From NCBI GenBank assembly GCA_053919585.1, contig CM132785.1: 64,000 bases of DNA, one strand, 5' to 3'. Source of the DNA: Euprymna scolopes (taxonomy: Eukaryota). The notes beneath the pieces are model-generated. The model saw only the letters and a program-made list of their open reading frames with translations. It made no database searches and was not told the origin of the DNA. Made by a program: the position numbers and the translations under genes. Each line of letters opens with the position of its first letter. The stretch's first letter is position 1. Below are positions 1 through 63,983 of this stretch, one piece after another.

Positions 1-170
1 CGACAAAGATGGCGACCACTGGATATTCGTTTATACAATAAATACAAATATATATATATCAACACATTAACAACTGAAGTGCATTAGTAGTCTTTAGAGG
101 TGGTGCAAAAGCCGATTAAAGTGAGAAACACTACGGAAAGAGTTAACAAATTAATACCCCATACACTGAC

Positions 171-344
171 CTCCACGTCCAAATCCCATACTCTCCAGAG
201 TGTCTCTGGCCAAACAAAGATCATGAGAAAGTTCCGGATAACCGGCTTCCTCGCCTTCAATGATGGCATTCTCCAATTCAACTTTATTTCTAGTTTTGAT
301 TGCGGCCACCAGTCGGCCACGGAGAACATCCGGGTATTTCAGAT
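171..344 (-). CDS. exon class B (divergent)
   Basis: 174 nt; DLKYPDVLRGRLVAAIKTRNKVELENAIIEGEEAGYPEL; donor GTCAGT. Confidence 0.85.
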
Positions 345-1289
345 CTGATTAACGTAATTGGTAAGTAAATACCATGTTATATTAAATCATAAAGACATAA
401 TTGCCTCATTACTGCATTAAAAGTATATGAAAATATTTCGCTGAATTCATTTTATTTAATAAAACATTGTAATGTAATTCTCAAGAAAGTTTGATAACAA
501 TTTAACAAATGAAAGTGGACGAAATATAGAGCTTACTTTGAATTTAACAGAAAAAAAATTAATGGAGTTTAATTCAAGGGGTTTAAATGTTATAATTTTG
601 TAGGCAATGTTGCTTTACAAACATGTTTTAGTAAGTAAACATATTTGATAAAGGTCGATATAAATCTGTTTACTCTAACCTCCTTTGCCGCTGTCCAATT
701 TGTGAAGGGTTTTCCTGGCTTTATGGATGTCATCATCTAAATCAGTAAAGCCGGCTGTCACACAATCTTTAATGGCTTCATCCAACTTCTTCATGTCATT
801 TGATTCGAAGGCCGCATTCAGTCTTTCATGTAGATTTTCCAGGGAGAGACTTCCTGATAATCGAAAATCAATTTTACTCATATTTTTTCTTAATAAACAA
901 TAACAGACATAGGTTTTTTTGTTTTGTAAATCAAATGGAATAATTCCTTTATACAATGACTCTACATGCATGGCTTTCATGTTGCCATATTAACTGTATG
1001 AAATGAAACCAATTCTTTTGAATTGTTATGCGTATCATGGTGTGTTATTATTAATATTGGGACTATTAATCAGAATCGAAATCGAAAAAAATCGGAACTC
1101 TCTGAGATATCGGAATCAGAAAAATAATAGATTAATTTCCGATCCAAATGCGATTTTTACTTACTTATTTGTTATTTTGTTCAAATTAAAACGTAATTTT
1201 ATATTTCTCGCACAAATGAATAATATTCATAAATATTTTACAATGAGTTGTAATCTTGGATACGATACATAAAAGGAAAACATTAAGAA

Positions 1290-1356
<67 letters not shown>

Positions 1357-4300
1357 CTAAGATTTTAATGTAAATGAAGACTCTCTGCAAAATTACACAA
1401 TCAGAAAAAAACAATGGAAACCATACTTTTAAGTTGATTTTAAAATGTAGATCGGTAATTGGATCGGAATAAGTAAACATATTGGAATCGTCCCATCACT
1501 AGTTATTATATATAAACATTTTGGTTATAATGGATACCCATTTTATAAGATTAAAATAGATATAAATTATTATGTCGAATATTTCTAACCTCCGAATCCG
1601 CCTCCCATTTTCTTCAGTGCGTCCCGTGCACTACGAAGATCAAACGAAATTTCTGGGTACTTGGCTTCTTCAGCAATGTGGATCAGTTTCTCCAATCTTG
1701 CTCGGTCTTTGTGTTTCACAGCTGACTGCAACTGAGCTCGCAGTCTCGCTGGTGGCAGGTCTTCCAGAGAGATATCTAAGTGGAACCATATTATAGTTTT
1801 TTTATTGCATGAAAAGGACTGATAATTTTCATGTATAGAGATTTTTCAAGTGCATTTTTATGCTATATAAAGAGGGATTGATGAATCCCAATTGCTCTGG
1901 CAATATTTATGTTTACTTCTTAATATTTAATGAAAATTTGAATCAAAATATTTCATCATATGAGATGAATAATGATTAATTAGATAAAGTGGGATAGGCT
2001 GCTTAGATTAATACAAGATAGTGTATAATATTTGCAGCATCCGTTAAGAGTTATTTATCATCGTCACAGATCATTATAAAATTAGTGCTTTTTCAATGAA
2101 AGAGTCTTTATATAATATATATTTTAGGAGCATTTTAATTTGATAAGATATCGTATTTCACAGTATATAAGACGCACATTTCAATTTAAAAATACTATAT
2201 AAATAAAGAGCTTGCAATACGTGCTGATATTTTTAGTAAAGTAAATTTAAATTAGAAATCAACTGAAAAATTATGTGCTAAAATATGCTATGAGTTAATT
2301 TTTTTATAAACGATAAAACTCGCGTCTTATATACCGAAAAATATTAGAATATATTAGTATAAACTCATTCTGATATTCAATGGATCCGATGTATGTATCT
2401 TTATCATTCAGAAAAAAATTATTCAGCATAAAATAAGAGTAATTGAGCTGGCGTTTATTAAAATACAATCTTGAAGGTAATTTACACAATTTAATAATTT
2501 TCAAAAAAATTGTATAGAATACATAAAAGTAGAAATATTCGAACCTGCTTCTGCATGTTTCTTATGGAAGAGACTGAACTTAGGAGATTTCAAATGGAAT
2601 CGAGGTAATGACATAGTTCCTGATAATTAAAATTAATCACATTTTGAAGACAAATCATTTTTATATTCATTATTAATTATTAAGTAAAAGACATATTTTG
2701 CTTATATACACTTTTATACGAAATTATCTCTGATTAGAGTTAACCGTCCTGTAACACAAGTAAAATTGAATCTTTATTTCGTGACGTTAGTCTGTTACTT
2801 AACTTGAATTTATCAGATACATATTAATATTTTTTAATTAAAATGAATTACCATAGTTGATTTTCTAGATATCTTACATTTACATAAATATTTCAGAAAT
2901 ACAATGTTATGAAGAGTTTCTTTAAACATGTAATTTACTCATTTATGTGATATTATAGAAAATGATGCAAATCGGGACCAATATAAATGGATAGATCAAA
3001 CCTCTGTGAGATGCTTCAAGAGATTTCAGATGAAATCTAGCCTCGTGGATATTGGGCGAAAGTTCCGGGTATCCGGATTTGACACATTCGGCTATTACTT
3101 TCTCAAGAAGGTCTGGATCGTTTTTCTTCATCGCTTTATCTAGCTTCAGGCGGAGTTTATCTACACTCAGTTTTCCTGACAAACAAAACGTACCAATAAA
3201 GAAATGACAATACCATTACTACCCAAAGGTAGGTGATAAAGAGATAGAATACCGGAAAAGTCAATACATTTTATGAGTTAGGTGAGCCGTGTCATATGAA
3301 TCTAATGGTTTTAACATGTGGATATGGATATTTAGTTTCATATAATATTATGTGTTGAATGTTATCACTAGGCGATAGCACGGACAAGAAAAGAAAAACA
3401 ATAATAAAATGAAATCGGATGATTATCTATTGATGGATTATAATTGACGTGAATGCTGACTTGACACATTTGCACATGTAAATGAATAGTTTCACGTATG
3501 AAAGTGAAGATGAGTGTATTACACAGTACAATTATCATAGTAATGAAATTAATATCTTATACAACGAATATAAAATAATTACTATTAATATATGTCATAT
3601 GATTTACTTAGGTTGATAACATGAAAAGTTAGAACAATCTGAAAACATTTCGAACGATTAAAGTCATGAATTCAAATGATCATAAATGATGAATTTGTAA
3701 TTTAGAACAAGAGAAAACTCGATTATATTAGTTAGAAGAAATATCACTGTAAATATATTTAAATTCAGATTATTAGGGATGGTTTCATCACCGATACATT
3801 TTTGAACAAATAACAATATTTGTCATTAAAATATTTAGTTGGATTTGTTTAAATTAAAATGAGTATATAAGTAAAAGTGTCATATATTAAATATCATTTC
3901 AAAAAAAAGGTTTTCAATAAAATATCTTATCTAGTGATACTTATTGTAAATGATTATGAAAAATAAATGAATTGATGTTAGACAACGTATGAACTAACCT
4001 TCGTGCCCAGATCCCAGACCATCTAGAATATCCCTGGCCTGAGGGAGATCAACGGATAGCTCTGGATAACCAGCTGCCACACATTCATTGATAACCTTCT
4101 CCAATTCTAGCTTGTTCTTAGATTTCATGGCTGCGTGGAGTTCACCTCGCAGGACATCGAGTGGTTTTACCCCTGATTGACATAATTAGTGTTGTTAAAA
4201 TATTTGTAAGAGAAAAGGTCATTTTGATATTTAAAAAATGGATCAGGGAATTAAAATTAGTAGTGAAAAAAAAATCAAATTTTCTAATAGTCATAAAAAA

Positions 4301-7300
4301 ATATTTTCCTGTAATCTGATTTGAATGTTATCTCTAACTTTATATACAAAATATATATTCGGAACAGGCGTTCCAAGATATATTTTGATTTGGCTTAGGA
4401 CAATTAATCCAAATTTAAACCGGGAATCAAAAAGGAAAAAAAATGAAATCGTGCTTATTTTCCAATGCCAAAAACGATTATTTTAATATTTATTTGTTTT
4501 GTTTATTTTATTTATAACTTTATTTTCCATTGATAATACTACTAATAATTATAGATATTTATTGATTTTTAAATTGCTTGTAAAACAAATTTCTATGGAT
4601 TAACTCTCGCAAGTGTGTTATTTACGTTCGCACATATTACATGTGTTTTAGGGCAATCCGAAAAGAAAGGAAAGAAAAACAACTCTATATTATATTAAAA
4701 TGTCATAAACGAATCGGAAGCAGTAATTGTATAGGAATCGGAAATTTAGAACTGAGTCGGTAATTGTATTGGAATTGGGGAAAAATATTCGAATCATCCC
4801 ATTACTAATTTTGATATTATTTAATGATATTTCTGGTAAGATCCGCCATAAAATATTGCATATGTGCAAACTATCACCGATTATATAGTGACGTTACTTA
4901 TCTTAAAAATGTTAATTGACAAATACACATTAAAGAATCATTTATTTGATCAAACGATTATTTTTTATGCCGATTGAACTTACCATAAGTCGATACATAA
5001 TTTATAAGTAATTTATTTTAATTCAAATTCACATATCATTTCAGGTAATTATTATTATTTAACTAATAAAATTTTGGATTAAATTATCTAACCTCCGGAT
5101 GCGCCTTCCAATTTTAGTAGGGCTTCTCGTGCGTCACGGAGATCAAACTCCAGTCCTGGAAGTCTGGATTTCTCGGCAATGTCAATAAGTTGTTCTAACT
5201 TAAGTCGGTCTTTATTCTTAATAGCTAAACGCAGTTGATCTCTGAGGGAGTCTGGTGTCATGCCTTCCGCAGTAATATCTAAGTAAAATTAGGTGTAAAA
5301 GTTACATGTTAGTACATAATTAATTATTGTATTAAACTAGTACATATTTATACAAATTAAGATTCCAAATTATTTCAGATAAAATTGTATGGGTCTGATT
5401 GTTTTCATGCACACGTAAACATTGTAAGTGTATAATTAATGTAAATATTAAATAAAACATTAAAAATGAATTAATTTACTTTGTTATTTAAGATTAGATT
5501 TTTATATTTTAAAAGTCAGGATTAATGAAAGTTATTATTAGGCAATGATTATATTATATTTAACTTTATTGTTTTATGACACACAGTTTTTACCAAACAA
5601 ATATTCGTTACGATATGTTATTAAATTATTATTAATGATAAAACGTTTAAAATTGTCATTAATTTAAATATATATTAAAGATAAATGATTTTAATTTGAT
5701 CAACCATAAAAACAATAACATTTTTTAAATGTAAATTTTCTAAGTATTAAAAATTCAAACACGCATAATAATAATTTGTAAATAATTCGAACCTGCACCT
5801 CCATGTTTCTTACGGAACAAACTGAATTTAGGAGCCTTGAAATGGAAACTTGGAAACGACCATGATCCTGATAATCAAAATTAATTATATTGACTTATTA
5901 CAAAGTTATAATTACTTATGAATATAATTGGTAACATTTACTTCATAAGTTTTTCTTGACTCAGAAGATCATAATTTACTTTTTCATTTTTATACTACAA
6001 TATGTTATATAGATTATATATATATTAATATTTTTACATTTGAGAAACTGGTTTAAATTTATTACGACATTACCATTTATCCAAACACGTAATATTAAAC
6101 GAAACATATAGATTGTGTCTCTTTATTACTTAAAAAAACTGTTTTCCATTATACTTAATTTCAAAAACTAATTAAAAGCAATTGCAAAAGCAATCAGGAA
6201 AATTTACAAAATAATAAACATATATTTATGTTCTATTTATTGGATTACTCTGAACTTATGTTAAAAATTTTATTAATTTAATAAAAAAAATACTGAAATT
6301 AAATTAGAATTAATCAACAGTCATGCAATAAGTGATGAAATTATGAGATTTTATTGTTAAATATGAAAATATGTTAAGAAATAATTAGACTTTTATAGAG
6401 ATTGGAGAATACACATTAAATCAAAGAAACACACCTTTGTCACTTCCTTCTAAAGATCCCAAATGGAGTTTTGCTTCTTTGATATCGGGTGACAATTCTG
6501 GATATCCAGAAGCGACACATTCGGCTATTACTTTCTCCAGAAGGTCTGGATCCTCTTTCTTCATAGCGGCGTCTAGTTTCAAGCGGAGTTGATCTACACT
6601 CAGTTTACCTGATGAACAAAAACGTACCAATGACTATAGCAGTATAACTATTTCAATCTCTAAAGAGTAAATCGAAAATGAGAAGACATAGATTTAAATT
6701 AGAAGTAATTGTTAATATTCAGTTTTACTACAGAATTACATGATGCATAGATTTTAAAAATAATTCTAACCTCCAACTTCGCCTCCCATTTTTTGGAGAG
6801 CGTCTCGGGCGTCACGAAGATCGACGTCTAGTTCTGGATATTTGGCTCCCACATTAATAAGTTGTTCTAATTTCAGTTGGTCTTTGTTCTTTATAGCTAA
6901 CCGAAGCTGTTCACGTATGGCTTCTGGTGTCATGTCTTCCAGTGAGATATCTATGTAAAATTACATTTGTAACAAATTTTTAGTTACTATTTTACTTTTT
7001 GATATGTTAGCAACTATATAAGTTTACGACATGTTTAAATTTGAAACATAGTATGTTATTACTTAGCAGGATAGTTCACCTAATTACATATGTAATTTTA
7101 AGTGAGAAATACAACTATTTCTAACATTATATATAATATATAACATTTAATATAAGAAAAATATAAATGAATATTTATGATATATTGTATATGTGTTAAT
7201 ATATACACCCATGCATGTGATTTTTTTTAATGTGAGAAGATATATAATCATTTCGACAACCAAATAACGTCACAGTTCACACAATCCCGAAATGAGGGCG

Positions 7301-10059
7301 AAATTCAAGTTTAGGACTTCTGGTCTCTATTTCCATGGCTTGTATGAGCGGCGATATTGTTTGATTGTGAAATGATGATTACTTATATGCGTGTGTATAT
7401 TCGGTTTTAGCAATTATATAATAAAAGTTGTGAATTTATATTGATTTGTGAATGACATTTATTATATTTTGATTCAAAAAGATTTCACAAAACATATATA
7501 ATGTCTAATAGAAATACGGCAAGGAAACACTAAGAAAATCTTATAATTAAATAAAGATCTTTGTTATTTGCGCTTTCAAGGAAATGTCAACTATCGAGTG
7601 TTTAGAATATTTTAAAAGAAAATAAATAAAAGATTCGAACCTGCATCTCCATGTTTTTTACCAAACAGACTGAACTTGGGAGATTTCAAATGAAATCCAG
7701 GAAATGACCATGATCCAACTGATGATGAAAAAATAATGCCCCTTTTTAGTGAATTATAAATAAATGACCCGATCCGATTTAAATATATCTCACAGTTCAA
7801 GAAACTTTATAAGGCAAACTTATTCACATATAAAAGGTGTTGTAGTTAATTAATAGTAATTCATTGTATTCAAGTGAGTTTAATAACTTAATGGAAAATG
7901 AATAATGATACCACATAGTTTTATACTTTCATATTTTTACTTATAATTAAAGACTGTTTCATTATTTTGTATGAATGTATACAAAATATTGATTGTATAG
8001 GATTACGATTTAAAAAGAAAAGAATCATTATAATATTGTTAAAATACTTTGATATCTAAGGATCTCGTTATTCATAACTTAAAGTAAAATAGGCTCCATT
8101 ACAGTAATCGATTTAGAGGAATTAGACAAACCTCCATCGCTCTCATCAAGGGCATCCAGATGAAGTCTGGCCTCATGAATATCGGGTAAAAGTTCTGGAT
8201 ATCCCGAAGCGACACATTCGGCTATTACTTTTTCCAGATTGTCGGCATCGTTTTTCTTCACAGCACCTTCTAATTTCAACCGGAGTTTTTCTAAACTCAG
8301 TTTTCCTGATAAACAAAAACGCACCAATTACCACAATATTAAAATTATCCTTGTCAGTATGGAGTAAAGTGAAAATAAGTTTACGGGAGAAGGAGAAAAC
8401 GAAATATAAACAAATGAATGATTTGATAAGTTTTAATTTATTGTAAATTTGAAAATTATATCCACTGAAATCGTGATTTAAAAAGAATAAAACATAAATA
8501 AAAATGCATTAACTTATATTAAGTACGTCTGGAATGAGACAGTTTACGACTTTACAAATAATATTGTAATGAAGGATATCGACTTAATAAATCAACAAGA
8601 ATCCAAGGACTAACCTCCACGACCAAATCCCATGCCGTTAAGAGTGTCTCTGGCTTGGCGAAGATCAAAGGAAAGTTCTGGAAAGCCTGCTTCTTCACAT
8701 TCAATAATAGCATTTTCTAATTCAACCCGGTTTTTGCTTTTGATTGCCGCATTTAGTTGTGCTCGGAGAGCGTCTGGTGTTTTCAGTTCTGCTTAACGTA
8801 ATAATCAATGTTAAATAAGATTCTTGAAATAAAATAATATCGAACTAGTTACATATTTAAGCGTGTCTTTAGTTAGTTGAATGTAAAATACTAATAAAAG
8901 TTCATAAAGATAAGACTTTGTTTACACTGAAATCGTATTTATATTAATATTATGTGAATCTGAATTCAATTACATTTTTGACCATGTATTTAGTACTCTA
9001 AATACAAATCATGTTTGACATGGTAATAAAGATGAGAATTTAAAACGACACATTTCTATCATTACTATGATTAATGATAATCAATAAATTGATTTAACGG
9101 AAATATAAATACAATTCTTTAAGTTATTTCGTAGATCAAAATCTTTAGACTCTAACCTCCTTTGCCACCTTCCAATTTGAAGAGTGCTTTTCGTGCATCG
9201 TGAATATCGACATCAAGGTCTGCGAAACCGGCCGATATGCCTTCTTTAATAGCGACATCCAACTTCTTCCTGTCCTTTGATTTGAATGCTGCCTTCAGCC
9301 GTTCACGCAGATTTTCCAGTGAGAAACTTCCTGATAACCGAGAATCAATTTTATTGATACTTTAATATTAAATACCTCAAAGTTACGTTCAGTTAAAATT
9401 GCAAACCGTTTTAACTTCAATAATCAGCGCTTTAAAATGAGTAGAAATGTTCCCCTTACAATTAAGTCTAGTGTATATAATAACGTATTTACAGATTAAT
9501 GTATTTTAATTTACGATAACAAATGGATTATCCGAAAGTATTGTGAACTCTTTAAAAGATTTAGTTAATTTATAATACAGAATTAATGGTAGTAAATGTT
9601 ATAAAAATCTAATTTTTATAGCAATATATTATTATTAACACCATTAAATGAATTATTTCAAATTACGATGCGCCATTATAGGTACATGATTAATATTTTA
9701 TAGTTAGAGAATTAATTATATTTAATTTTCTAACCTCCAAATCCGCCTCCAAGTTCTTTGAGGGCTAGTCTGGCATCCCGGAGATCATATGACAGTTCTG
9801 GATATTGGGCTTCTTCAGCAAGCTCAATAAGTTTTTCTAATTTTGGTTTATCTTTATTCTTTATGGCTAACTGCAGTTGAGCACGCAGTTTCTCTGGTGT
9901 CAGGTCATCAAGAGAAAGATCTACATAAAATCATATGTAAAACATTGTCTTAGTGCGATTTTAAAATTTGTATTATATTTTATAATTAAAAACAATTTGT
10001 CATACTATATTTACATATATATATATATAATTATATATATATAATTATATATATATAAT

Positions 10060-10090
<31 letters not shown>

Positions 10091-12746: not shown

Positions 12747-12805
<59 letters not shown>

Positions 12806-15438: not shown

Positions 15439-15485
<47 letters not shown>

Positions 15486-33712: not shown

Positions 33713-33771
<59 letters not shown>

Positions 33772-34235: not shown

Positions 34236-34297
<62 letters not shown>

Positions 34298-34705
34298 TGG
34301 TATGTTTACAGAAATATATCCATATTGAAATAGTTTCATTTACAATATAAAATAGAATGCAATGAATGTATTTGTACTATTAAAATAAGTAGATTAAATC
34401 ATTATAAAAAAATAAATTCTTTTGTATTTTCTAACCTCCAAATCCGCCTCCCAGTTCTTTGAGGGCAAGTCTGGCATCTCGAAGATCATACGACAGTTCT
34501 GGATATTGAGCTTGTTCAGCAAGCTCAATAAGTTTTTCTAGTTTTGGTTTGTCTTTGTTTTTTATGGCTAACTGCAGCTGTGCACGTAGTTTCTCCGGTG
34601 TCAAATCATCGAGAGAAAGATCTACATAAAATTATGTATGAAACATTGTCTGAGTAAATATCTTTAATTCGGTGCATATTTGAAAATTAGCAAACATTCA
34701 TAATG

Positions 34706-34739
<34 letters not shown>

Positions 34740-51036: not shown

Positions 51037-51092
<56 letters not shown>

Positions 51093-54000
51093 TATATATT
51101 TACTCAATTATTTATTTCTCTCTATATATGTGTATGTGATAAATTTGTACTGAATTTAACTCAAATCATATGAAAAAAAAGTTATTCGCTTACCCTCAGC
51201 CAAAACGAATTGATTGCAATTTAAAAACAAATTTGTCCAAGGACTTGAAAGACAGTCAATAAAAGAAGAAAAGTTTGGTGAATTTAACATGAAGAAATCA
51301 TTTGTTTTGAATATATCCAAACATATTTTAAAATATGATATATGTTACTTTAAAAGTACTTTGCTCAATTAGGATTAATGTTATCGACAGGGACAAACCT
51401 TTGCCACTGCCCCCTAAAGATTCCAGATGAAGTTTGGCAGCTTCAATATCAGGTATAAGTTCTGGGTATCCAGAACTGACACATTCGCCGATTACTTTCT
51501 CCAGAAGATCTGGATCGTTTTTCTTCATGGCAGCATCTAGTCTCAGACGGAGTTTGTCAAGACTCAATTTTCCTGATAAATAAAGACAAGGGCCAATAAT
51601 AAGAAGAATGATCTAGTTCCACACGAAACGGTTATCAGCAAAACGACAAATAGAATAGTGTCATAAATTAAAGAGAAAAGTATTACTATTTGAAAAGTTA
51701 TAAAAGTTGAGTTGTACTCGATTATATTTTTAAAACACATAAGACGATAATATATATCTACATGAAGATTATAATATCCAAAATGATTACATTTCGATTT
51801 TAAATCTGTTAGATGTGAACATTAAAAACTTAATGAAGATAAATCACAGATCATTCTTGTTTTACACTTTTGATATAATCTAGATTGTCATGCACTTAAA
51901 TAATAATATTAAATAAGATAATTTATATTGAATGATTTCGAGTTATTTGATTGAGACAAAATCAAATAAATAGGTCTTATACTGAATTAAAAATTATATT
52001 CTATATAAAATGTTTGGAAATGTATGAATGTTTGTTGTCGGTTAAATTAAAAGAAAAATATGTCGCACCTCCTTTTCCCAGATCCAACTGTAATGTGTCA
52101 CAGGATTTATGGATATCAGGTTCAATAACAGGGACGCCGAGGGATATGCTTTGTTTCACAAGAGCATCCAGGGCCTTTGTATCTTTGGACTTTCCTGACA
52201 ATCGTAACTTATCTCCTGATAATCAAAAGCCAATTGCAATGCATAGGTTAAAACAAAGTATATGACAGTATGTACATTATAATTTAGAATTTACATGCTC
52301 AAGGACAATAAGATGGGCTTGTAATTTAAACAAAACTATCTTCGCTGCCTTATTTATATTATTACAGAGATATTTTTTCTGAAACAGATAATTTATTATA
52401 ATCAACATTGCAATAATGTTTGAAATGTTTGACTAGATGATTTTTATAATTGTTTGTCTATTAACGAAAAAGTTAATAATCTTTATCAAATATAAGAAAT
52501 ATTTTTCTCCACAGAAAATAGATAAATAAAACAAGTATATCATGGAAACTCATTTAAATGAAAATTGAGTCTTATATTCGTATTGTATTACGAATAGAAT
52601 AACCATTTAAAATGATACAATAATGTAATGATTTAGTAAATGTATTTTCGTTTAAATTTGTTTACATATTTGAAACTTGGTTAAATAAGAAATGTACTTG
52701 GTAAAATATGTACTTTTTATAATATATAATTTTTAAAATATGTAAATTCTAAAATATACACTTTCTAAAATATGCAGTTTCAGAAATAGCTACTACTTAC
52801 AAAAAGAAAACAAAACAATGGTGCATGCGATATACTGAATACCCATTTTGAAACGACTGAAGAGAATACTTGAAATTTATATAATCTTTATAATAAAAGG
52901 GATGATACACCATACATAAATAACTATCCAATAATTAACAGGAAAGCAGAAATATTACAATTATTAATTATTGGCCATAGTAAATCTGCATTTTGCGTAA
53001 CCATGCGTAAATCTTATTAGATTTTCATTAAATGAAATGTTTATAAATGGATAATTATTTGGATACAAAATAGGTAAACGTGTAATACACACAAATTTAA
53101 TAGCTAATACGTTAGTGGTACTTTTAAAATGATGCAAACCTTCATCTCCTGGTTTTTTACGGAAGAGACGCATGCTAGGGAATTTCACATGGAAGCCGGG
53201 CTTGGATCCTGGGAATCGAAATTTGATATTTCAAAGAAATGCTAAAGGAAAATGATTGTTCTAAAGAAATATATTTTTCTAAAGATTGTATTAATTTTAT
53301 ATTATACTAAATAAGGAAATGTGCTATATACGAAAGGAAATTTACTGTAAATAATATTTCTTTAAAAATTAGAAAAATCATTAAAATAAATGTTTTCTAA
53401 ATTGAAGATAACATAATCATATATGACATCATTAATTACTAATTACTCTTTTACAAGAAAGTATCAACAATTTACAAATTATGTCTACTGTGAATGTCTT
53501 ACTTCTCTGTTCTAATCAAAATTAATTTTATAATACATATAGTACTAGAATCAATCTCAGGAAGAAAAACAAACCTTTTACGCTTCCCGTCAGTGAATCC
53601 AAATGAAGTCTAGCCTCTTGGATATCCGGCCAAAGTTCCGGATATCCGGAACTGACACATTCGGTAATCACTTTATCCAGAAGATCTGGGTCGTTTTTCT
53701 TCAGAGCCCCATCTAGTTTCAGGCGAAGTTTGTCAACGTTCAATTTGCCTGACAAACACAAGCATACCAAGGACAATGATATCAGACCGATTCGTATATG
53801 AAGATTTAGAGTTAGAAAAGTTGAAGGAGAACCGAGATATTTTAAAGGATTGAATTTGAATATGTTTTTGAAGTTTCTTTTAAATACACTTCAGTTGTTT
53901 GAACGTTACATGTCATGGTTAATATTAAAATACTATTTATTGTTATCCATTTATAACTAATATTGATATATTTTATTTAAATTTTGATTAAATAATCAAT

Positions 54001-56894: not shown

Positions 56895-56950
<56 letters not shown>

Positions 56951-59900: not shown

Positions 59901-62900
59901 AATTTGACCAAATTTTGTCTTGTTTATACTCTCAATCTTAAAGTAGTTTTCTTCGAAAATTCAAATGAGCCAATAAAAAATGGCATTAAAATAATATTTA
60001 AAAAGAAGGAGATCGTTAAATATATTAATGAGACATATGTTTTTCAATTAGATATATCCATCAATTATATTCTTGAAAAGTTTAATACGATATTATTAAT
60101 AGCCTAAGCGTAGATTAATATTGCTTTATTACATGTTTTTTTTAAATGCGTGAAGCTAATTTTAAATGAGTGTTTATTTATTTATATAATTATTCGAGTA
60201 TCAATATCTTGAATGAATTATCTAAACGAATGAGCGTTATATTTACTTAAAAACGTTAATGACATTTTATTATTTTGATATAATTTTATTCGAAAACGCT
60301 TAAATTACATATAATAAAATACAATTATCACTTTTTTGTAAATATTGTCAAAGCAAAATTAGTCGAACCTGCATCTCCATGCTTCTTACGGAACATACTG
60401 AACTTAGGAAGTTTCATGTGGAACCTTGGTAACGACAGAGACCCTAATAAACAAAAGTAAAAGCCTTTTAAGAACACTAGAAATTACATAAACTACTACA
60501 AACGTTACAGTGTTCGAATATTATACTAGTATTTTTACACCTTTTTAAATCTTGTGTTTAATTTAAGAAATACCGGCGTTATATTTCACGTAAATCATTA
60601 ACTATCAATTTCTGATATTAAAGCTATTTTACTTTGAAGAACCATTTTAAAACATTTAACCAACATATCTATTTAATAAATAGATAATTCTTATGAATGC
60701 TTGTATATGTTAAAGAAATACTACTTTATCGAAAAATGTTAAAACTTTATATATAATCAATCATATAACATTACATTTAAAGCTTTATCATTAATATATG
60801 GCAGCAGTTAATAAGCCTAATAACCACGAACCTCTAGCATTTCCTTCCAGAGATTCCAGTTGAAGTTTGGCCTCTTCAATACCAGGCAAAAGTTCTGGAT
60901 ATCCAGAACTAACACATTCGGCAATTACTTTCTCTAAAACATCTGGATCTTCTTTCTTCATGGCTGCATCTAGTTTGAGCTGGAGTTTGTCAACGCTCAA
61001 TTTTCCTGACAAACAAAACGGACCAGTGATAACATTATTTAGATAGCTACCTATGACGGATAGAAATATAAATCGTAATTCATTTTAATTCATCGAAAAT
61101 TATGAAATGCCACCCAAGACAGTGGCAGAGGAGATTCTAAATTATTTAGTATATTTTACAAAAATTGAATACAATATTATAAATAATAAATTAAACTTTC
61201 ATTAATATATTCAAAATTATGAACGTAACCAAGGTGAATAAAATTTCTTTATTTATGTAATTTATTTATGTGTAATTATAATTGTCATATATTTTTAATG
61301 TTAAATTTAAGAATAATTTTATTTCAGTAGAACCTAAGTATAACTGCGGTATTATTTCTGTATTTAGCTGGAAATGGAATAAGGTTACAAAACAGAAAAC
61401 AGAAGAGGAAACTTGTATATAGAATTAATAAATAAGAAACCTGGAATCGATGCGAATAAAAAATATTGGAAAACGAATTACTTATATTTTTACTGAGTAA
61501 TATGTTTAGTAGGAAAAGTATATAAAACTGTACCTCCTTTTCCTCCTTCCAGTTTAAATAAGACATCTCTAGCTTCTTGGATGTCGACATCAAGGCCTGG
61601 AAGGCCAAGTGATATGCTTTCGTTTATAAGAGCATTCAGAGCGTCTTTGTCTTTAGATTTGGCTGCTTTCTTCAGTTGCAATCGCATGTCCTCAGGAGAT
61701 ATAGATCCTGATAATCGAAAATCAATTTAATTCTAAATATACTTATGAATAGAATTTCCAAAAAAACTACAATCATGATTAATCAAGGAAGTAAAGGAAA
61801 AAATTAGTATATATGTTTAATTAGGTAAAGGTACAGAATAGTTTACATTTGATATCTCTTAAACCAAATGAAAAAATATGATTTATAGAAAAATATATAT
61901 TCACAAAATTTTAGGACTAGGAAACGATTTGCCATTTTTTTAAGTAAAAGTACAGAATAGCTTACACTCAAGAATTTGTAAACCAAACAAAATCCTGGAA
62001 CCTTCATAGTTTTAGCTCGTGTAAATAATGTATAAGAATGTTAAGCAGTATAAAATTATTGCATATCGTTTCTTCACTTTAAAACTATATGGATTAAGAA
62101 AGGAAATTTTCTAATCCGTTTTATTGAAATTATGTGTTCACGAGTTTTACCAGTGCTTTGATTTTTACCGTTTAATTGATTCGTTTCAAACATTGCTAAA
62201 GTTTACTGTTAAATTTTATTATTTATTAACAATTAAAATATATGTCACCATATGTTATTGAATTATATAATCAAATTAAAAATTTATCTGACGTGCCGAT
62301 TAATTACATTGATTAAGATAAAAAAGTTAGTGATTTCAATTTGAATATCTAACCTCCGAATCCGCCTCCTAATTTGTTGAGCGCAATCCTGGCATCCCGA
62401 AGATCAATAGCAACTTCTGGATATTGAGCTTTTCCGGCAATCTCAATAAGTTCTTCTAATTTTGGTTGGTCACTGTTCTTTATGGCTAATCGTAATTGTT
62501 TACGCAGAGCGTCCGGTGACATGTCCACGGAAATATCTACGTAAAATGACACAAATTATCTTACTAAACGGAAACGACATTTTATTACTTAATGTAAAGT
62601 TACATGACACTTCTTATTTATGAAAACTTAATTTGAAAAATTAGATAGAAGCATTAAAATAGTGTGAATAATAAAATGATAAAATAGTCTTTTAAGCAAT
62701 ATGAAATTAATGTATATATTATTAGTTCAATACATTTATTATCGTTTGCTCTTATAGCAATATTCTATTCATTAATAATCATGTTACTAGAATTATAATA
62801 TAAAACGTTTGGTTCATTCTAAAATATTCAGAAAAAAACGTAAATATGTTGTTGTTTTCAAGATTAAAGTTAAAACCAAAATTAACCAATAATGAATGTT

Positions 62901-63751
62901 TATAATGAAAACAATACATTCAGATAAGGTGTGTGAAAATGAAAGGTTCGAACCTGCATCGGCATGTTTCTTTTTGAAAAGACGGAAGCTAGGACGTTTC
63001 ACATGTAATCTTGGCAACGAGAATGATCCTGATAATTAAAATTAATTATAATCATGAGAATTTCAACCATGAAAAAACATGATTCAAACAAACAAATATT
63101 TATTCTGAAGCTGATCTAAAAGTGTTCCTTTTTTATTATTTATTTTTGAGCTAAAGACATAGCTTATCAAATTTATCTACATGCATATTGAGAATTATAA
63201 TTGATTCTTAGATAAAATGCTAATTTCATAAGCTTAATAAATTTACGCAAATAAATAGTTTTAATGAGAATTTATTCATGGGTTTATAATTATTAATGTA
63301 GAACATTATATAATAGTTATTCATTTAAATGTACGCGATGAATTATATTTTTCATTAACATTATAAACATGCTGTCGATAAATTTAAGGTAAATGTGATT
63401 TTATTTCAGAATAAAGTCAGATAATGTCAACATATATTCTTTAAAATGCATTAAGATGAGATCAAATTCGTCAAACCATGCAAAGAGAGAGAGAGAGAGA
63501 GGGGGGTAATGTCAAGCTGATCTGTTATATAGAGAATTTTAAAAAAGCCGAATGAATGGTAGGGCGTTAGGACAAACCTTTTCCACTTTCTTCCAAGGAT
63601 CCCAGATGAAGTCTGGCTTCTTGGATATCGGGCAAAAGTTCGGCGTGTCCAGAACTTACACATTCGGCTATTACTTTTCCTAGAATTTCTGGATCGTTTT
63701 TCTTCATGGCATTCTCTAGCTTCACGCGGAGTTTGTCTACGCTCAATTTTC
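171..63751 (-). CDS. Giant multi-exon tandem-repeat protein (partial; 104 exons, about 5380 aa in window; 82 helical modules plus 22 basic/aromatic linkers)
   Basis: GC-richer islands recur in the order A>E>D>C>B on the minus strand. All are AG/GT-bounded, phase 1-1 and 3n long. No in-frame stops were found in the exons I translated or those covered by the ORF track. Copies differ largely at synonymous sites while intron cores diverge. Confidence 0.9.
680..853 (-). CDS. exon class C (divergent)
   Basis: 174 nt; GSLSLENLHERLNAAFESND; donor GTTAGA. Confidence 0.85.
1050..1502. mobile_element. degenerate MITE-like element with (G)GAATCG subterminal repeats
   Basis: Imperfect inverted ends (TGGGACTATT..AATCGTCCCATCACTA); homologous to about 4330-4807. 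Confidence 0.45.
1296..1349. repeat. (TA)n microsatellite
   Basis: direct reading. Confidence 0.95.
1590..1775 (-). CDS. exon class D
   Basis: 186 nt; DISLEDLPPARLRAQLQSAVKHKD. Confidence 0.85.
2545..2619 (-). CDS. exon class E
   Basis: 75 nt; GTMSLPRFHLKSPKFSLFHKKHAEA; donor GTTCGA. Confidence 0.8.
3002..3175 (-). CDS. exon class A
   Basis: 174 nt; GKLSVDKLRLKLDKAMKKND. Confidence 0.85.
3999..4172 (-). CDS. exon class B (divergent)
   Basis: 174 nt; GVKPLDVLRGELHAAMKSKNKLELEKVINECVAAGYPEL. Confidence 0.85.
4330..4807. mobile_element. second degenerate copy of the same MITE-like element
   Basis: Shares CGGAATCA..ATTTTCC..CGATT..TTATTTGTT and the end GAATCATCCCATTACTA with 1050-1502; left boundary approximate. 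Confidence 0.45.
5093..5278 (-). CDS. exon class D (divergent)
   Basis: 186 nt; DITAEGMTPDSLRDQLRLAIKNKD. Confidence 0.85.
5793..5867 (-). CDS. exon class E
   Basis: 75 nt; GSWSFPSFHFKAPKFSLFRKKHGGA. Confidence 0.85.
6435..6608 (-). CDS. exon class A
   Basis: 174 nt; donor GTGTGT. Confidence 0.85.
6771..6950 (-). CDS. exon class D (2-codon deletion)
   Basis: 180 nt; DISLEDMTPEAIREQLRLAIKNKDQLKLEQLINVG--AKYPEL. Confidence 0.8.
7199..7401. mobile_element. small fold-back/MITE-like insertion
   Basis: AATCATTTCGACAACCAAATAACGTC is an imperfect inverted repeat of GCGATATTGTTTGATTGTGAAATGATGATT; outer pair ATATACAC/GTGTATAT. Confidence 0.45.
7641..7718 (-). CDS. exon class E (+1 codon)
   Basis: 78 nt; acceptor shifted 3 nt (CAG|TTGGATCATGG). 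Confidence 0.8.
8132..8305 (-). CDS. exon class A
   Basis: 174 nt, AG/GT, phase 1-1. Confidence 0.88.
8615..8788 (-). CDS. exon class B
   Basis: 174 nt, AG/GT, phase 1-1. Confidence 0.88.
9157..9330 (-). CDS. exon class C
   Basis: 174 nt, AG/GT, phase 1-1. Confidence 0.88.
9735..9920 (-). CDS. exon class D
   Basis: 186 nt, AG/GT, phase 1-1. Confidence 0.88.
10015..10090. repeat. interrupted (TA)n microsatellite
   Basis: direct reading. Confidence 0.9.
10359..10433 (-). CDS. exon class E
   Basis: 75 nt; donor GTTGGA. Confidence 0.85.
10822..10995 (-). CDS. exon class A
   Basis: 174 nt; donor GTTCGT. Confidence 0.88.
11448..11621 (-). CDS. exon class B
   Basis: 174 nt, AG/GT, phase 1-1. 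Confidence 0.88.
12033..12206 (-). CDS. exon class C
   Basis: 174 nt, AG/GT, phase 1-1. Confidence 0.88.
12468..12653 (-). CDS. exon class D
   Basis: 186 nt, AG/GT, phase 1-1. Confidence 0.88.
12750..12799. repeat. (TA)n microsatellite
   Basis: direct reading. Confidence 0.95.
13067..13141 (-). CDS. exon class E
   Basis: 75 nt, AG/GT, phase 1-1. Confidence 0.85.
13559..13732 (-). CDS. exon class A
   Basis: 174 nt, AG/GT, phase 1-1. Confidence 0.88.
14135..14308 (-). CDS. exon class B
   Basis: 174 nt, AG/GT, phase 1-1. Confidence 0.88.
14699..14872 (-). CDS. exon class C
   Basis: 174 nt; donor GTTGGA (no overlapping stop). Confidence 0.88.
15133..15318 (-). CDS. exon class D
   Basis: 186 nt, AG/GT, phase 1-1. 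Confidence 0.88.
15441..15480. repeat. (TA)n microsatellite
   Basis: direct reading. Confidence 0.95.
15740..15814 (-). CDS. exon class E
   Basis: 75 nt, AG/GT, phase 1-1. Confidence 0.85.
16199..16372 (-). CDS. exon class A
   Basis: 174 nt, AG/GT, phase 1-1. Confidence 0.88.
16630..16803 (-). CDS. exon class B
   Basis: 174 nt, AG/GT, phase 1-1. Confidence 0.88.
17219..17392 (-). CDS. exon class C
   Basis: 174 nt, AG/GT, phase 1-1. Confidence 0.88.
17636..17821 (-). CDS. exon class D
   Basis: 186 nt, AG/GT, phase 1-1. Confidence 0.88.
18187..18261 (-). CDS. exon class E
   Basis: 75 nt, AG/GT, phase 1-1. Confidence 0.85.
18644..18817 (-). CDS. exon class A
   Basis: 174 nt; PELLPD variant. 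Confidence 0.88.
19257..19430 (-). CDS. exon class B
   Basis: 174 nt; IACEE..SFDLHHARSTLEG variant. Confidence 0.88.
19843..20016 (-). CDS. exon class C
   Basis: 174 nt, AG/GT, phase 1-1. Confidence 0.88.
20284..20469 (-). CDS. exon class D
   Basis: 186 nt, AG/GT, phase 1-1. Confidence 0.88.
20867..20941 (-). CDS. exon class E
   Basis: 75 nt, AG/GT, phase 1-1. Confidence 0.85.
21311..21484 (-). CDS. exon class A
   Basis: 174 nt, AG/GT, phase 1-1. Confidence 0.88.
21953..22126 (-). CDS. exon class B
   Basis: 174 nt; donor GTTTGT (no overlapping stop). Confidence 0.88.
22492..22665 (-). CDS. exon class C
   Basis: 174 nt, AG/GT, phase 1-1. Confidence 0.88.
22927..23112 (-). CDS. exon class D
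   Basis: 186 nt, AG/GT, phase 1-1. Confidence 0.88.
23477..23551 (-). CDS. exon class E
   Basis: 75 nt; donor GTGCGA. Confidence 0.85.
23987..24160 (-). CDS. exon class A
   Basis: 174 nt, AG/GT, phase 1-1. Confidence 0.88.
24627..24800 (-). CDS. exon class B
   Basis: 174 nt, AG/GT, phase 1-1. Confidence 0.88.
25196..25369 (-). CDS. exon class C
   Basis: 174 nt, AG/GT, phase 1-1. Confidence 0.88.
25525..25592 (-). pseudogene. relic of the 5' part of a class C exon plus its acceptor flank
   Basis: TCAGTCGTTCTCGCGGGTTTTCTAGTGTAAAATATCTTAAGATTCAAAATTCA aligns to TCAGTCGTTCGCGCAGGCCTTCCAGTGTAAAACCGCCTAAGAATCGAAATTCA. Confidence 0.7.
25817..26002 (-). CDS. exon class D
   Basis: 186 nt, AG/GT, phase 1-1. 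Confidence 0.88.
26386..26460 (-). CDS. exon class E
   Basis: 75 nt, AG/GT, phase 1-1. Confidence 0.85.
26854..27027 (-). CDS. exon class A
   Basis: 174 nt; PELLPD variant. Confidence 0.88.
27294..27361. repeat. 32-bp tandem duplication
   Basis: AATGCGTTTATTTTATTTTCATGTTATACTTT x2. Confidence 0.9.
27547..27720 (-). CDS. exon class B
   Basis: 174 nt; IACEE..SFDLHHARSTLEG variant. Confidence 0.88.
27895..27985. repeat. about 49-bp tandem duplication
   Basis: TTTTTAAAACTGTAATTGTATRCATATTTACACACAATATAA x2. Confidence 0.85.
28158..28331 (-). CDS. exon class C
   Basis: 174 nt, AG/GT, phase 1-1. Confidence 0.88.
28602..28787 (-). CDS. exon class D
   Basis: 186 nt, AG/GT, phase 1-1. Confidence 0.88.
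29162..29236 (-). CDS. exon class E
   Basis: 75 nt, AG/GT, phase 1-1. Confidence 0.85.
29642..29815 (-). CDS. exon class A
   Basis: 174 nt; donor GTTAGT. Confidence 0.88.
30387..30560 (-). CDS. exon class B
   Basis: 174 nt, AG/GT, phase 1-1. Confidence 0.88.
30962..31135 (-). CDS. exon class C
   Basis: 174 nt, AG/GT, phase 1-1. Confidence 0.88.
31395..31580 (-). CDS. exon class D
   Basis: 186 nt, AG/GT, phase 1-1. Confidence 0.88.
32061..32135 (-). CDS. exon class E
   Basis: 75 nt; tandem CAGCAG acceptor (78 nt alternative). Confidence 0.85.
32576..32749 (-). CDS. exon class A
   Basis: 174 nt, AG/GT, phase 1-1. Confidence 0.88.
33326..33499 (-). CDS. exon class B
   Basis: 174 nt, AG/GT, phase 1-1. 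Confidence 0.88.
33715..33768. repeat. (TA)n microsatellite
   Basis: direct reading. Confidence 0.95.
33974..34147 (-). CDS. exon class C
   Basis: 174 nt, AG/GT, phase 1-1. Confidence 0.88.
34237..34296. repeat. (ATT)n microsatellite
   Basis: direct reading. Confidence 0.95.
34436..34621 (-). CDS. exon class D
   Basis: 186 nt, AG/GT, phase 1-1. Confidence 0.88.
34708..34737. repeat. (TA)n microsatellite
   Basis: direct reading. Confidence 0.9.
35132..35206 (-). CDS. exon class E
   Basis: 75 nt; donor GTTAGA. Confidence 0.85.
35581..35754 (-). CDS. exon class A
   Basis: 174 nt, AG/GT, phase 1-1. Confidence 0.88.
36272..36445 (-). CDS. exon class B
   Basis: 174 nt, AG/GT, phase 1-1. Confidence 0.88.
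36839..37002. other. assembly gap (164 N)
   Basis: run of N within a C-to-B intron. Confidence 1.
37142..37315 (-). CDS. exon class C
   Basis: 174 nt, AG/GT, phase 1-1. Confidence 0.88.
37631..37816 (-). CDS. exon class D
   Basis: 186 nt; donor GTTAAT (overlapping stop is TAA). Confidence 0.88.
38186..38260 (-). CDS. exon class E
   Basis: 75 nt; donor GTGCGA. Confidence 0.85.
38637..38810 (-). CDS. exon class A
   Basis: 174 nt; donor GTTAGT. Confidence 0.88.
39321..39494 (-). CDS. exon class B
   Basis: 174 nt, AG/GT, phase 1-1. Confidence 0.88.
39914..40087 (-). CDS. exon class C
   Basis: 174 nt, AG/GT, phase 1-1. Confidence 0.88.
40325..40510 (-). CDS. exon class D
   Basis: 186 nt, AG/GT, phase 1-1. 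Confidence 0.88.
40853..40927 (-). CDS. exon class E
   Basis: 75 nt; donor TG|GTTTGA. Confidence 0.8.
41249..41422 (-). CDS. exon class A
   Basis: 174 nt, AG/GT, phase 1-1. Confidence 0.88.
41958..42131 (-). CDS. exon class B
   Basis: 174 nt, AG/GT, phase 1-1. Confidence 0.88.
42527..42700 (-). CDS. exon class C
   Basis: 174 nt, AG/GT, phase 1-1. Confidence 0.88.
42800..43060 (-). pseudogene. relic C acceptor (about 42800-42852) and relic D 3' end/donor (about 43020-43058)
   Basis: ACTTCCTGATAAT..CAATTTGTACACATGAGGTTT copies the 42695-42748 flank; TTCTAACCTTTGAATTCGTCTCTCAATCTTTTGAGAG resembles the D end TTCTAACCTCCAAATCCGCCTCCCAATTCTTTGAGAG. Confidence 0.6.
43242..43427 (-). CDS. exon class D
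   Basis: 186 nt, AG/GT, phase 1-1. Confidence 0.88.
44092..44166 (-). CDS. exon class E
   Basis: 75 nt; GSWSLPRFHWKSPKFSLFSKKHGDA. Confidence 0.85.
44553..44726 (-). CDS. exon class A
   Basis: 174 nt, AG/GT, phase 1-1. Confidence 0.88.
45301..45474 (-). CDS. exon class B
   Basis: 174 nt, AG/GT, phase 1-1. Confidence 0.88.
45880..46053 (-). CDS. exon class C
   Basis: 174 nt, AG/GT, phase 1-1. Confidence 0.88.
46443..46628 (-). CDS. exon class D
   Basis: 186 nt; DISLEDMSPDDLRQQLNLAVKNKD. Confidence 0.87.
47137..47217 (-). CDS. exon class E (+2 codons)
   Basis: 81 nt; ASWSLSLPRFSFKAPKFSLFRKKRGDA. Confidence 0.82.
47752..47925 (-). CDS. exon class A
   Basis: 174 nt, AG/GT, phase 1-1. Confidence 0.87.
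48632..48805 (-). CDS. exon class B
   Basis: 174 nt, AG/GT, phase 1-1. Confidence 0.87.
49273..49446 (-). CDS. exon class C
   Basis: 174 nt, AG/GT, phase 1-1. Confidence 0.87.
49716..49901 (-). CDS. exon class D
   Basis: 186 nt, AG/GT, phase 1-1. Confidence 0.87.
50028..50130. repeat. degenerate (AAT)n tract
   Basis: direct reading. Confidence 0.8.
50859..50933 (-). CDS. exon class E
   Basis: 75 nt; GSFSFPGFHMKLPSMSPFRKKHGDA. Confidence 0.83.
51038..51092. repeat. (TA)n microsatellite
   Basis: direct reading. Confidence 0.9.
51399..51572 (-). CDS. exon class A
   Basis: 174 nt, AG/GT, phase 1-1. Confidence 0.87.
52069..52215 (-). CDS. exon class C (9 codons shorter, divergent)
   Basis: 147 nt; GDKLRLSGKSKDTKALDALVKQSISLGVPVIEPDIHKSCDTLQLDLGKG; second in-frame acceptor gives 52069-52194. 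Confidence 0.7.
53140..53208 (-). CDS. exon class E (-2 codons)
   Basis: 69 nt; GSKPGFHVKFPSMRLFRKKPGDE. Confidence 0.78.
53575..53748 (-). CDS. exon class A
   Basis: 174 nt, AG/GT, phase 1-1. Confidence 0.87.
54509..54682 (-). CDS. exon class B
   Basis: 174 nt; GLKSPEALCGQLRAAIKSKN. Confidence 0.87.
54906..55400. mobile_element. piggyBac-type MITE (non-autonomous, 495 bp)
   Basis: TIRs CCCATTAGGTCCCACTG / CACTAGGACCTAATAGG; flanks TAAA and TTAA; internal inverted pair ATAAATAGGACACC (54927-54940) / GGTGTCCTATTTAT (55252-55265). TTAA target and CCY ends are piggyBac hallmarks. Confidence 0.7.
55505..55678 (-). CDS. exon class C (divergent)
   Basis: 174 nt; GNLSVDDFRQKLKAAIKSKD. Confidence 0.85.
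56122..56307 (-). CDS. exon class D (divergent)
   Basis: 186 nt; EISLDDISMDMLREKLQLAVKDND. Confidence 0.85.
56528..56610. repeat. compound (CA)n/(TA)n microsatellite
   Basis: direct reading. Confidence 0.85.
56853..56951. repeat. compound (CATA)n/(CA)n/(TA)n/(TATG)n microsatellite
   Basis: direct reading. Confidence 0.9.
57023..57097 (-). CDS. exon class E
   Basis: 75 nt; GTWSLPRLHFKSPKFSLFHKKHDDE. Confidence 0.83.
57472..57645 (-). CDS. exon class A
   Basis: 174 nt; donor GTGCGT. Confidence 0.86.
58164..58337 (-). CDS. exon class B
   Basis: 174 nt, AG/GT, phase 1-1. Confidence 0.86.
58896..59069 (-). CDS. exon class C
   Basis: 174 nt; GSISPEDVRLQLKTAAESND. Confidence 0.86.
59645..59830 (-). 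CDS. exon class D
   Basis: 186 nt; donor GTTCGA. Confidence 0.86.
60369..60443 (-). CDS. exon class E
   Basis: 75 nt; GSLSLPRFHMKLPKFSMFRKKHGDA. Confidence 0.83.
60832..61005 (-). CDS. exon class A
   Basis: 174 nt, AG/GT, phase 1-1. Confidence 0.86.
61534..61707 (-). CDS. exon class C
   Basis: 174 nt; donor GTACAG. Confidence 0.85.
62354..62536 (-). CDS. exon class D (-1 codon)
   Basis: 183 nt; DISVDMSPDALRKQLRLAIKNSD. Confidence 0.85.
62954..63028 (-). CDS. exon class E
   Basis: 75 nt; GSFSLPRLHVKRPSFRLFKKKHADA. Confidence 0.83.
63578..63751 (-). CDS. exon class A
   Basis: 174 nt, AG/GT, phase 1-1. Confidence 0.86.

Positions 63752-63947: not shown

Positions 63948-63948
<1 letters not shown>

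Positions 63949-63983
<35 letters not shown>
63949..63983. repeat. (AAT)n microsatellite
   Basis: direct reading. Confidence 0.9.

What the first reader, a model, noticed from the sequence alone, without database searches (positions are those of the whole stretch)
171..63751. Giant exon-cassette protein: 104 symmetric phase-1 exons cycling A>E>D>C>B, over 5300 aa of beads-on-a-string helical modules
Seen: 22 A, 22 E, 21 D, 20 C and 19 B exons, one structural module per exon, joining into a 16137-nt frame. The ORF track shows only fragments of this. The shared module consensus is L-R-x2-L-x2-A-[IMF]-K-x2-[DN]-x3-L-[ED]-x2-I-x6-[GQ]-[YF]-P-[EG]-L-x2-D-[IL]-x2-A-R-x2-L-x2-L, consistent with three amphipathic helices joined by Gly-rich hinges. 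Inference: a titin/nebulin/AHNAK-scale scaffold or molecular ruler with a 261-aa super-repeat (4 helical beads plus 1 basic-aromatic linker) built from a module I cannot assign to a named family. It extends beyond the upstream window edge, so it may be much larger.
Basis: partly seen in the sequence, partly recalled or inferred. Interest (0 to 1): 0.92.

Follow-up and report, generated by a model that had tools for sequence, protein, structure and literature searches.

The report
Giant three-helix-module repeat protein gene
The window is filled by part of one real, very large animal gene whose 104 in-phase exons each encode one small helical bead or a short basic linker; it belongs to an uncharacterised protein family otherwise named only in octopuses.

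Summary
On the minus strand, 104 exons (171-63751) all have AG/GT splice sites and are all phase 1-1. They join into 16137 nt (5378 aa) with no stop. They cycle through four 57-61-aa helical modules and one 24-aa basic-aromatic linker, giving a 261-aa super-repeat. The exons are under purifying selection (dN/dS 0.12-0.23) and have twice the GC content of the introns. The assembly gap lies inside an intron, so it cannot break the frame, but it could hide whole units. The gene runs off both window edges. AlphaFold predicts three helices per module and no fixed orientation between neighbouring modules. The module matches nothing in Pfam or the PDB. It is, however, clearly the repeat found in octopod 'kyphoscoliosis peptidase-like' and 'uncharacterized' proteins, where it also sits one module per phase-1 exon. 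An unnamed related species has the same five-exon cycle inside much larger module arrays. Most linker copies fit the published AHNAK motif for S100A10-annexin A2 binding. This fit is a lead, not evidence of homology. My best reading is an intracellular giant flexible scaffold or tether. The function is inferred, and no transcript data were available.

The parts
171..63751 (-). Array of 104 phase 1-1 coding exons, giving an internal 5378-aa stretch of a larger protein. The full exon table is in notebook entry 3.
   Evidence: all sites AG/GT, 16137 nt joined, 0 stops in frame.
26854..27027 (-). Helical module that begins KLSVD and ends in an acidic tail.
   Evidence: AlphaFold on the module alignment gives three helices with pLDDT 87.
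26386..26460 (-). Basic-aromatic linker with net charge about +3.6.
   Evidence: 17 of 22 copies fit the AHNAK phi+X+XPKphiXphi motif.
25817..26002 (-). Representative D exon, 186 nt. Helical module ending GGGFG.
25196..25369 (-). The only basic helical module, ending GGKG.
24627..24800 (-). Helical module ending GFGRG.
36446..37141 (-). F-to-E intron that contains the assembly gap (N at 36839-37002).
   Evidence: 139 nt and 393 nt of real sequence flank the gap. The outer ends resemble other F-to-E introns. The non-N length of 532 exceeds the usual 365-474.
52069..53748 (-). Irregular unit K-W-F. The D and E exons are missing, the W exon is 69 nt, and the F exon (52069-52215) is shortened to 147 nt and degenerate.
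   Evidence: No decayed D or E remnant was found.
3999..8305 (-). Two irregular units near the 3' side of the window: K-W-D followed by K-W-D-E.
61534..63751 (-). First unit in the window (K-W-D-F, no E exon). This is the most diverged unit.
63752..64000 (-). Upstream intron sequence. The first exon starts at an acceptor in phase 1, so the gene continues beyond the window.
   Evidence: acceptor ...tatcag before position 63751.
1..170 (-). Downstream intron sequence. The last exon ends at a GT donor in phase 1, so the gene continues beyond the window.
   Evidence: donor G|gtcagt after position 171.

Best explanation
The window holds an internal part of one real, very large protein-coding gene of an AT-rich animal genome. 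The source is probably a mollusc related to cephalopods, but that is inferred. What is shown: each exon encodes either one small module predicted to form three helices or a short basic-aromatic linker. The exons arose by repeated duplication of a five-exon unit and have since been kept by purifying selection. The protein belongs to the same family as the octopod KY-like and 'uncharacterized' module-repeat proteins. What is inferred: the product is an intracellular, cytoskeleton-associated giant scaffold or tether. In this reading the helical beads, joined by Gly-rich hinges, form a long flexible chain. The basic-aromatic linker recurs every 261 residues and gives regularly spaced docking sites for acidic membranes or for S100/annexin-like or actin partners, much as in AHNAK. 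Because every exon is phase 1-1, any subset could be skipped without breaking the frame, so protein length could be tuned by splicing.
For: The gene model is supported. Selection on the reading frame is supported. AlphaFold predicts three helices per module at pLDDT 87 and pTM 0.67. The two-module model keeps local confidence (pLDDT 79) but dips at the hinge, and pTM falls to 0.47. This suggests no fixed orientation between modules. The window's module profile scores 30-78 bits per module on octopod proteins. One is the O. vulgaris 2069-aa protein, which has Transglut_core and Ig-like_KY domains followed by 16 modules. Others are O. bimaculoides XP_014780069.1 and Argonauta LOC115214248. Octopus module exons also have phase-1 AG and GT sites at every module. 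An unnamed related species has the same K-W-D-F-E cycle. It also has about 170 further modules in about 108 kb sampled, all on one strand. An intracellular setting is suggested by three things. The octopod relatives carry KY-type domains. Weaker module matches occur in protist proteins with myosin heads, MyTH4 and CH domains. The protein has few cysteines (0.9%). The linker fits the published AHNAK binding motif in 17 of 22 copies, against 72 of 100000 shuffled units (PMC3220529).
Against: I have no transcript, protein or localisation data. The N- and C-termini are outside the window, so a signal peptide or a KY domain cannot be checked for this gene. The linker was not found in the octopus proteins and loci sampled. 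A profile of the linker hits nothing in PDB sequences or Pfam, so the AHNAK resemblance rests on a short degenerate motif that I noticed after the fact. The protist alignment was selected with the window's own profile, and it otherwise matches only de novo designed helical repeats. The deep homology could therefore be generic helix-loop-helix similarity. pTM is only an indirect measure of flexibility.
Confidence: 0.7

Rival explanations
1. The protein is a secreted or extracellular structural protein, such as a mucus, matrix or adhesive component, rather than a cytoskeletal scaffold.
For: Giant tandem-repeat proteins are common in secretions. An octopus skin-mucus proteome lists a kyphoscoliosis peptidase among its proteins (PMC11431876). 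The N-terminus is unseen, so a signal peptide cannot be excluded.
Against: The helical modules carry single cysteines, not paired ones, and overall Cys is 0.9%. There are no Ser/Thr/Pro-rich tracts typical of mucins. The related octopod proteins start with KY-type transglutaminase-like and Ig-like domains. The weaker protist matches carry myosin motor, MyTH4 or CH domains. Mucus proteomes also contain many cytosolic proteins.
Confidence: 0.12
2. The region is a decaying or unexpressed exon array, meaning a pseudogene or a segment that splicing normally skips. The 5378-aa product would then never be made in full.
For: 97 of 104 donors have T at position +3, which by established knowledge of splice-site consensus is a weak site. 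Some units have lost exons, and one F exon is truncated and degenerate. The O. vulgaris model of 2069 aa holds only 16 modules, although octopus loci carry many more.
Against: There is not one stop or frameshift in 16137 nt, and dN/dS is 0.12-0.23 at dS 0.5-0.8. The same donor type and the same five-exon cycle are kept in a related species. All of this points to long-term selection on translated exons.
Confidence: 0.1
3. The copy number and regularity are partly an assembly artefact, from collapsed or duplicated repeat units around the gap.
For: An assembly gap sits inside the array, and its flanks sum to more than a normal intron. Central units are about 90% alike in their exons.
Against: Neighbouring units differ at about 10% of exon bases and about 35% of intron bases, and their intron lengths differ. 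They are therefore distinct copies. A related species shows the same architecture independently. An artefact would change the count of units, not the nature of the gene.
Confidence: 0.08

Closest known systems
Octopod 'kyphoscoliosis peptidase-like' and 'uncharacterized' module-repeat proteins (O. vulgaris CAI9725887.1, O. bimaculoides XP_052825369.1, XP_014780069.1 and XP_052825468.1, Argonauta hians LOC115214248)
   Same: They share the same roughly 57-aa module, with the LR..L..A.K..D...L...I motif, G[YF]PEL, AR..L..L and a Gly-rich end. The window profile scores 30-78 bits per module on them. Modules are in tandem, one per phase-1 exon. G|GTTAG-type donors are present. A called gene of 5242 aa lies at the O. 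bimaculoides locus.
   Different: Identity is only about 40-60%. The octopus arrays mostly alternate two module types. The sampled octopus sequences have no W linker and no K-W-D-F-E cycle. The KY transglutaminase-like and Ig-like N-terminal domains cannot be seen for the window gene. None of these proteins has been characterised.
Unnamed related species in ENA assembly ERZ21867824 (contigs ctg117591l, ctg115097l, ctg65554l)
   Same: It has the same K-W-D-F-E exon cycle, including the W linker and its motif. One K exon product (P0010) is 82% identical to the window's first K exon. Donors are the same GTTAG type.
   Different: It is a different species, and its contigs carry no annotation. They also show upstream arrays of other module types, with periods of 1356 bp and 4840 bp, that the window does not reach.
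AHNAK (vertebrate giant scaffold)
   Same: It is of similar size and has a repetitive central region. The window's W linker fits the published S100A10-annexin A2 binding consensus phi+X+XPKphiXphi (PMC3220529).
   Different: The window protein is built of helical modules encoded by many exons. AHNAK's central repeats have been suggested to adopt beta-propeller-like structures (PMC3220529), and from my own knowledge they are encoded by one giant exon. The W-linker profile found nothing in PDB sequences or Pfam. In the W linker the first basic position of the motif is His.
Nebulin and titin (muscle rulers and springs with super-repeats)
   Same: By established knowledge, both are built from arrays of duplicated symmetric exons, show a hierarchical super-repeat, and have scope for length variation by exon skipping.
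   Different: No Pfam match to nebulin, Ig or FN3 modules was found. The module type here is different, and there is no evidence of muscle expression.
Spectrin-repeat proteins
   Same: They are chains of three-helix units that form long cytoskeletal linkers.
   Different: Spectrin repeats are about 106 aa and are joined by continuous helices. Here the modules are 57-61 aa with Gly-rich hinges. There is no Pfam hit, and Foldseek gives no match at E below 0.5.

Membership tests
Octopod KY-like / uncharacterised three-helix-module repeat proteins | Tandem modules of about 57 aa with the shared consensus | tested here: met
   The window-derived profile scores 30-78 bits on each of 10-30 modules in P0155, P0159, P0161 and P0162. 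The reverse comparison by tblastn and blastp agrees.
Octopod KY-like / uncharacterised three-helix-module repeat proteins | One module per exon, with phase-1 boundaries | tested here: met
   Phase-1 AG and GT sites are available at 6 of 6 modules in octopus locus L002. In the related-species loci, phase-1 AG sites are available at all 110 modules and phase-1 GT sites at 108. The other phases are far less often available.
Octopod KY-like / uncharacterised three-helix-module repeat proteins | N-terminal Transglut_core plus Ig-like_KY domains | not testable with these tools
   The 5' end of the gene lies outside the window. Walking upstream in the related species did not reach a non-repeat N-terminus.
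AHNAK | S100A10-annexin A2 binding consensus phi+X+XPKphiXphi | tested here: met
   17 of 22 W exons fit, with His at the first basic position. Only 72 of 100000 shuffled units fit. The motif is taken from PMC3220529. Binding itself was not tested.
AHNAK | Sequence homology to AHNAK repeats | tested here: inconclusive
   The W-linker profile finds nothing in PDB chains or Pfam at E up to 10. No full AHNAK sequence was available to compare directly. The bulk of the protein is helical. I do not file it as AHNAK.
Spectrin repeat | Match to the spectrin-repeat profile or fold | tested here: not met
   No Pfam hit for any of the 34 modules. Foldseek against the PDB gives nothing below E 0.5.
Nebulin / titin | Nebulin 35-aa modules, or Ig/FN3 domains | tested here: not met
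   No such Pfam hit in the modules or linkers.

The most novel reading that the evidence does not exclude
The window may be a slice of one of the largest animal proteins. This would be a KY-family cytoskeletal giant of well over 10,000 residues, built from several hundred copies of an unnamed, ancient three-helix module that is also used in protist myosin tails. In this lineage the protein would have gained periodic AHNAK-like docking linkers. That would make it an independently evolved counterpart of AHNAK, nebulin or titin whose length is set by cassette-exon choice.
Probability: 0.2. Interest if true: 0.75.

Novelty: new variant of a known kind. Interest (0 to 1): 0.55.

Why it matters
If the protein is expressed as modelled, it adds a new building block and a new example to the small set of giant scaffold proteins. 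The block is a 57-aa module predicted to form three helices, with no Pfam or PDB entry. The super-repeat is unusually regular: four beads plus one basic linker, each on its own in-phase exon. This makes it a clean system for studying how exon arrays grow, how they are homogenised, and how splicing might tune protein length. It also shows that current octopus annotations split or truncate this gene family. Finally, it gives a testable idea for the linker: periodic docking to membranes or to S100/annexin partners.

Tried and rejected
Searches that found nothing:
- Tandem Repeats Finder returned no rows, because the 2.8-kb period is above its 500-base limit.
- Pfam scans of single modules, of the module alignment and of the linker gave only noise.
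- PDB sequence searches with the module and linker profiles gave only weak hits to designed proteins, or none.
- Foldseek against the PDB with the one-module and two-module models gave nothing at E below 0.5.
- Rfam and tRNA scans of the window were empty.
- A permissive profile scan found no decayed extra exons in the long introns. The only plus-strand hits were antisense shadows of K exons.
- Literature searches on KY peptidase with cephalopods, on hillarin, on the sample accessions, and on AHNAK with cephalopods found no description of this protein.

Things I could not do:
- Walking upstream in the related species, using five of the nine contig look-ups made, stayed inside module arrays and never reached an N-terminus.
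- I could not retrieve the 5242-aa O. bimaculoides product, because the length window of the homology search excludes it for every query I could reference.
- I could not submit the spliced 261-aa unit to structure prediction or homology search, because it has no contiguous reference.

Readings rejected:
- Plus-strand coding is rejected because that strand would need CT..AC splice sites, and because of the frame-shift controls.
- Many separate small genes is rejected because no exon has its own start or terminal stop and all share one phase.

Full report
THE SEQUENCE. The window is AT-rich (25-31% GC in 2-kb steps). It has no tRNA or Rfam match. Reading the first 3.6 kb shows short GC-richer blocks. 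On the minus strand these are bounded by ...cag| and |gt.

EXON MODEL. Stop-free minus-strand segments cluster into one family of 82 helical-module pieces and one of 22 linker pieces. The plus-strand ORF families overlap the same blocks and are antisense shadows.

Counts are 22, 22, 21, 20 and 19. The transcript order is a K-W-D-F-E cycle with four incomplete units. Aligning each class gave one shared acceptor column and one shared donor column per class. Two W exons use an acceptor one codon away, still in phase. All 104 exons have AG before and GT after, lengths divisible by three, and phase 1-1. Joined, they give 16137 nt, or 5378 aa, without a stop. The other two frames have 344 and 414 stops. 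The super-repeat is 261 aa, and the median genomic period is 2788 bases. The full exon table is in notebook entry 3.

IS IT REALLY CODING? Four results say yes.
- Differences between copies fall mainly on third codon positions. Single-change codons are mostly synonymous in the proposed frame, but strongly non-synonymous when the frame is shifted.
- dN/dS among copies is 0.12-0.23, with median dS 0.5-0.8. The copies are therefore old and constrained, not recent assembly duplicates.
- Adjacent units are about 90% identical in exons and about 65% in introns.
- Exon GC is 44.6% against 22.6% in introns.

THE GAP. The N run at 36839-37002 lies inside the F-to-E intron (36446-37141). The two flanking exons are complete and have their own splice sites. 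The first roughly 110 nt and the last roughly 40-50 nt of this intron resemble other F-to-E introns. However, its 532 known bases already exceed the usual 365-474. Continuity across the gap is therefore not shown. The gap could hide extra intron sequence or whole five-exon units. Because every exon is phase 1-1, the frame is safe either way, and the exon count is a lower bound.

WINDOW EDGES. The first exon begins at an acceptor and the last ends at a donor, both in phase 1. The gene therefore continues past both edges, not only upstream.

THE MODULES. AlphaFold on A1 predicts three helices (residues 4-17, 20-33 and 36-56) with pLDDT 87 and pTM 0.67. I also modelled a two-module protein from a close relative (P0002) with an alignment of 25 in-register module pairs. 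It gives two sets of three helices with pLDDT 79, a dip at the Gly-rich hinge, and pTM 0.47. This fits beads joined by flexible hinges, although pTM is only an indirect measure. Three of the four module classes are mildly acidic. F is basic, and the 24-aa W linker carries about +3.6 net charge and is rich in F, K, W and H.

COMPARISON WITH KNOWN FAMILIES. Pfam, PDB sequences and Foldseek against the PDB give nothing significant for the module or the linker. A profile search of 1.84 billion representative proteins found 220 hits. Most are single-exon ORF fragments from unannotated assemblies. All the named animal hits are octopods:
- O. bimaculoides 'kyphoscoliosis peptidase-like, partial'.
- An O. 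vulgaris protein of 2069 aa. It carries Transglut_core, three Ig-like_KY stretches and then 16 modules that score 30-72 bits each.
- O. bimaculoides and O. sinensis 'uncharacterized' proteins.
- An Argonauta hians protein with the same architecture as the O. vulgaris one.

At the O. bimaculoides locus of P0001, a called gene of 5242 aa runs over the fetched 23 kb. The KY-like partial gene lies about 160 kb upstream on the same strand. Octopus modules also sit one per exon, with phase-1 sites at every module. The literature held here describes none of these proteins.

A CLOSER RELATIVE. Contigs of ENA assembly ERZ21867824 (species unnamed) carry the same K-W-D-F-E cycle. One K exon product is 82% identical to the window's first K exon. 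On the same 180-kb contig and on a second contig there are long arrays of other module types, with periods of 1356 and 4840 bases. About 170 modules lie in roughly 108 kb sampled, all on one strand. The two contigs end in the same array, so one gene may cross both. I did not reach an N-terminus in that species.

DEEPER RELATIVES. Weaker matches (6-27 bits per repeat) occur in protist proteins, including ones with a myosin head, MyTH4 or CH domain. Profile-profile comparison of the window modules with 28 protist repeats gives 98.6% probability. I treat this with caution, because those repeats were chosen with the window's own profile. In addition, their profile otherwise hits only de novo designed helical repeats.

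THE LINKER. The published AHNAK consensus for binding the S100A10-annexin A2 complex is phi+X+XPKphiXphi (PMC3220529). 17 of 22 W exons fit it, for example with F-H-F-K-A-P-K-F-S-L, where His is at the first basic position. Only 72 of 100000 composition-preserving shuffles of a unit fit it. The related species keeps the motif. The sampled octopus proteins and loci lack the linker. This is a post hoc match to a short motif. It is a lead for function, not evidence of homology.

INTERPRETATION. Shown: a real, very large, selected coding array whose module is shared with octopod KY-like proteins. Inferred: an intracellular flexible scaffold or tether with periodic basic docking sites and possible length control by exon skipping. 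The rivals are a secreted structural protein, a mostly skipped array, and assembly inflation. Each is weaker but not excluded. There is nothing here to refer to a person for decision.

VERDICT. The module is unnamed but not unprecedented. Interest is moderate.

Noticed in passing
All 104 donor sites in window 171-63751; also loci L002-L007, L013, L014: 97 of 104 donors have T at intron position +3 (GTTAG 56, GTTCG 20, GTTTG 18). By general knowledge of splice-site consensus this is an unusual choice. G|GTTAG also dominates in the related species and occurs in Octopus. For D, F and E exons, reading through the donor gives Gly then a stop at once.
   Followed up: partly
K exons, e.g. window 3060-3085; plus-strand segments listed: The DNA that encodes S-G-Y-P-E in K exons is a near-palindrome (TCCGGATACCCGGA). 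The antisense frame therefore also reads SSGYPELTH. This explains why plus-strand ORFs look like relatives of the module.
   Followed up: yes
window 1296-1350: A (TA)n microsatellite of about 55 bases inside the D-to-F intron of the last unit.
   Followed up: no
L009-L012 (ENA ctg117591l, about 19-32 kb) and L013-L015: The related species has a 1356-base, four-exon module array repeated at least ten times with near-identical copies. It also has a 4840-base array shared by the ends of two contigs. This suggests one gene spanning both contigs, or an unresolved assembly.
   Followed up: partly
L001 (Logan SRR24189495), L006 9998-10411, L007 5860-6228 and 9935-10318: Some relatives have two modules fused in one open frame with no intron between them. 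Introns between modules have therefore been lost, or were never present, at some positions.
   Followed up: no
L002 and L008 (O. bimaculoides CM046607.1, 38.69-38.91 Mb): NCBI models split this region into a 'KY-like, partial' gene, a 192-aa 'uncharacterized' gene and a 5242-aa product. All are on one strand. The true gene may be a single much larger unit.
   Followed up: partly
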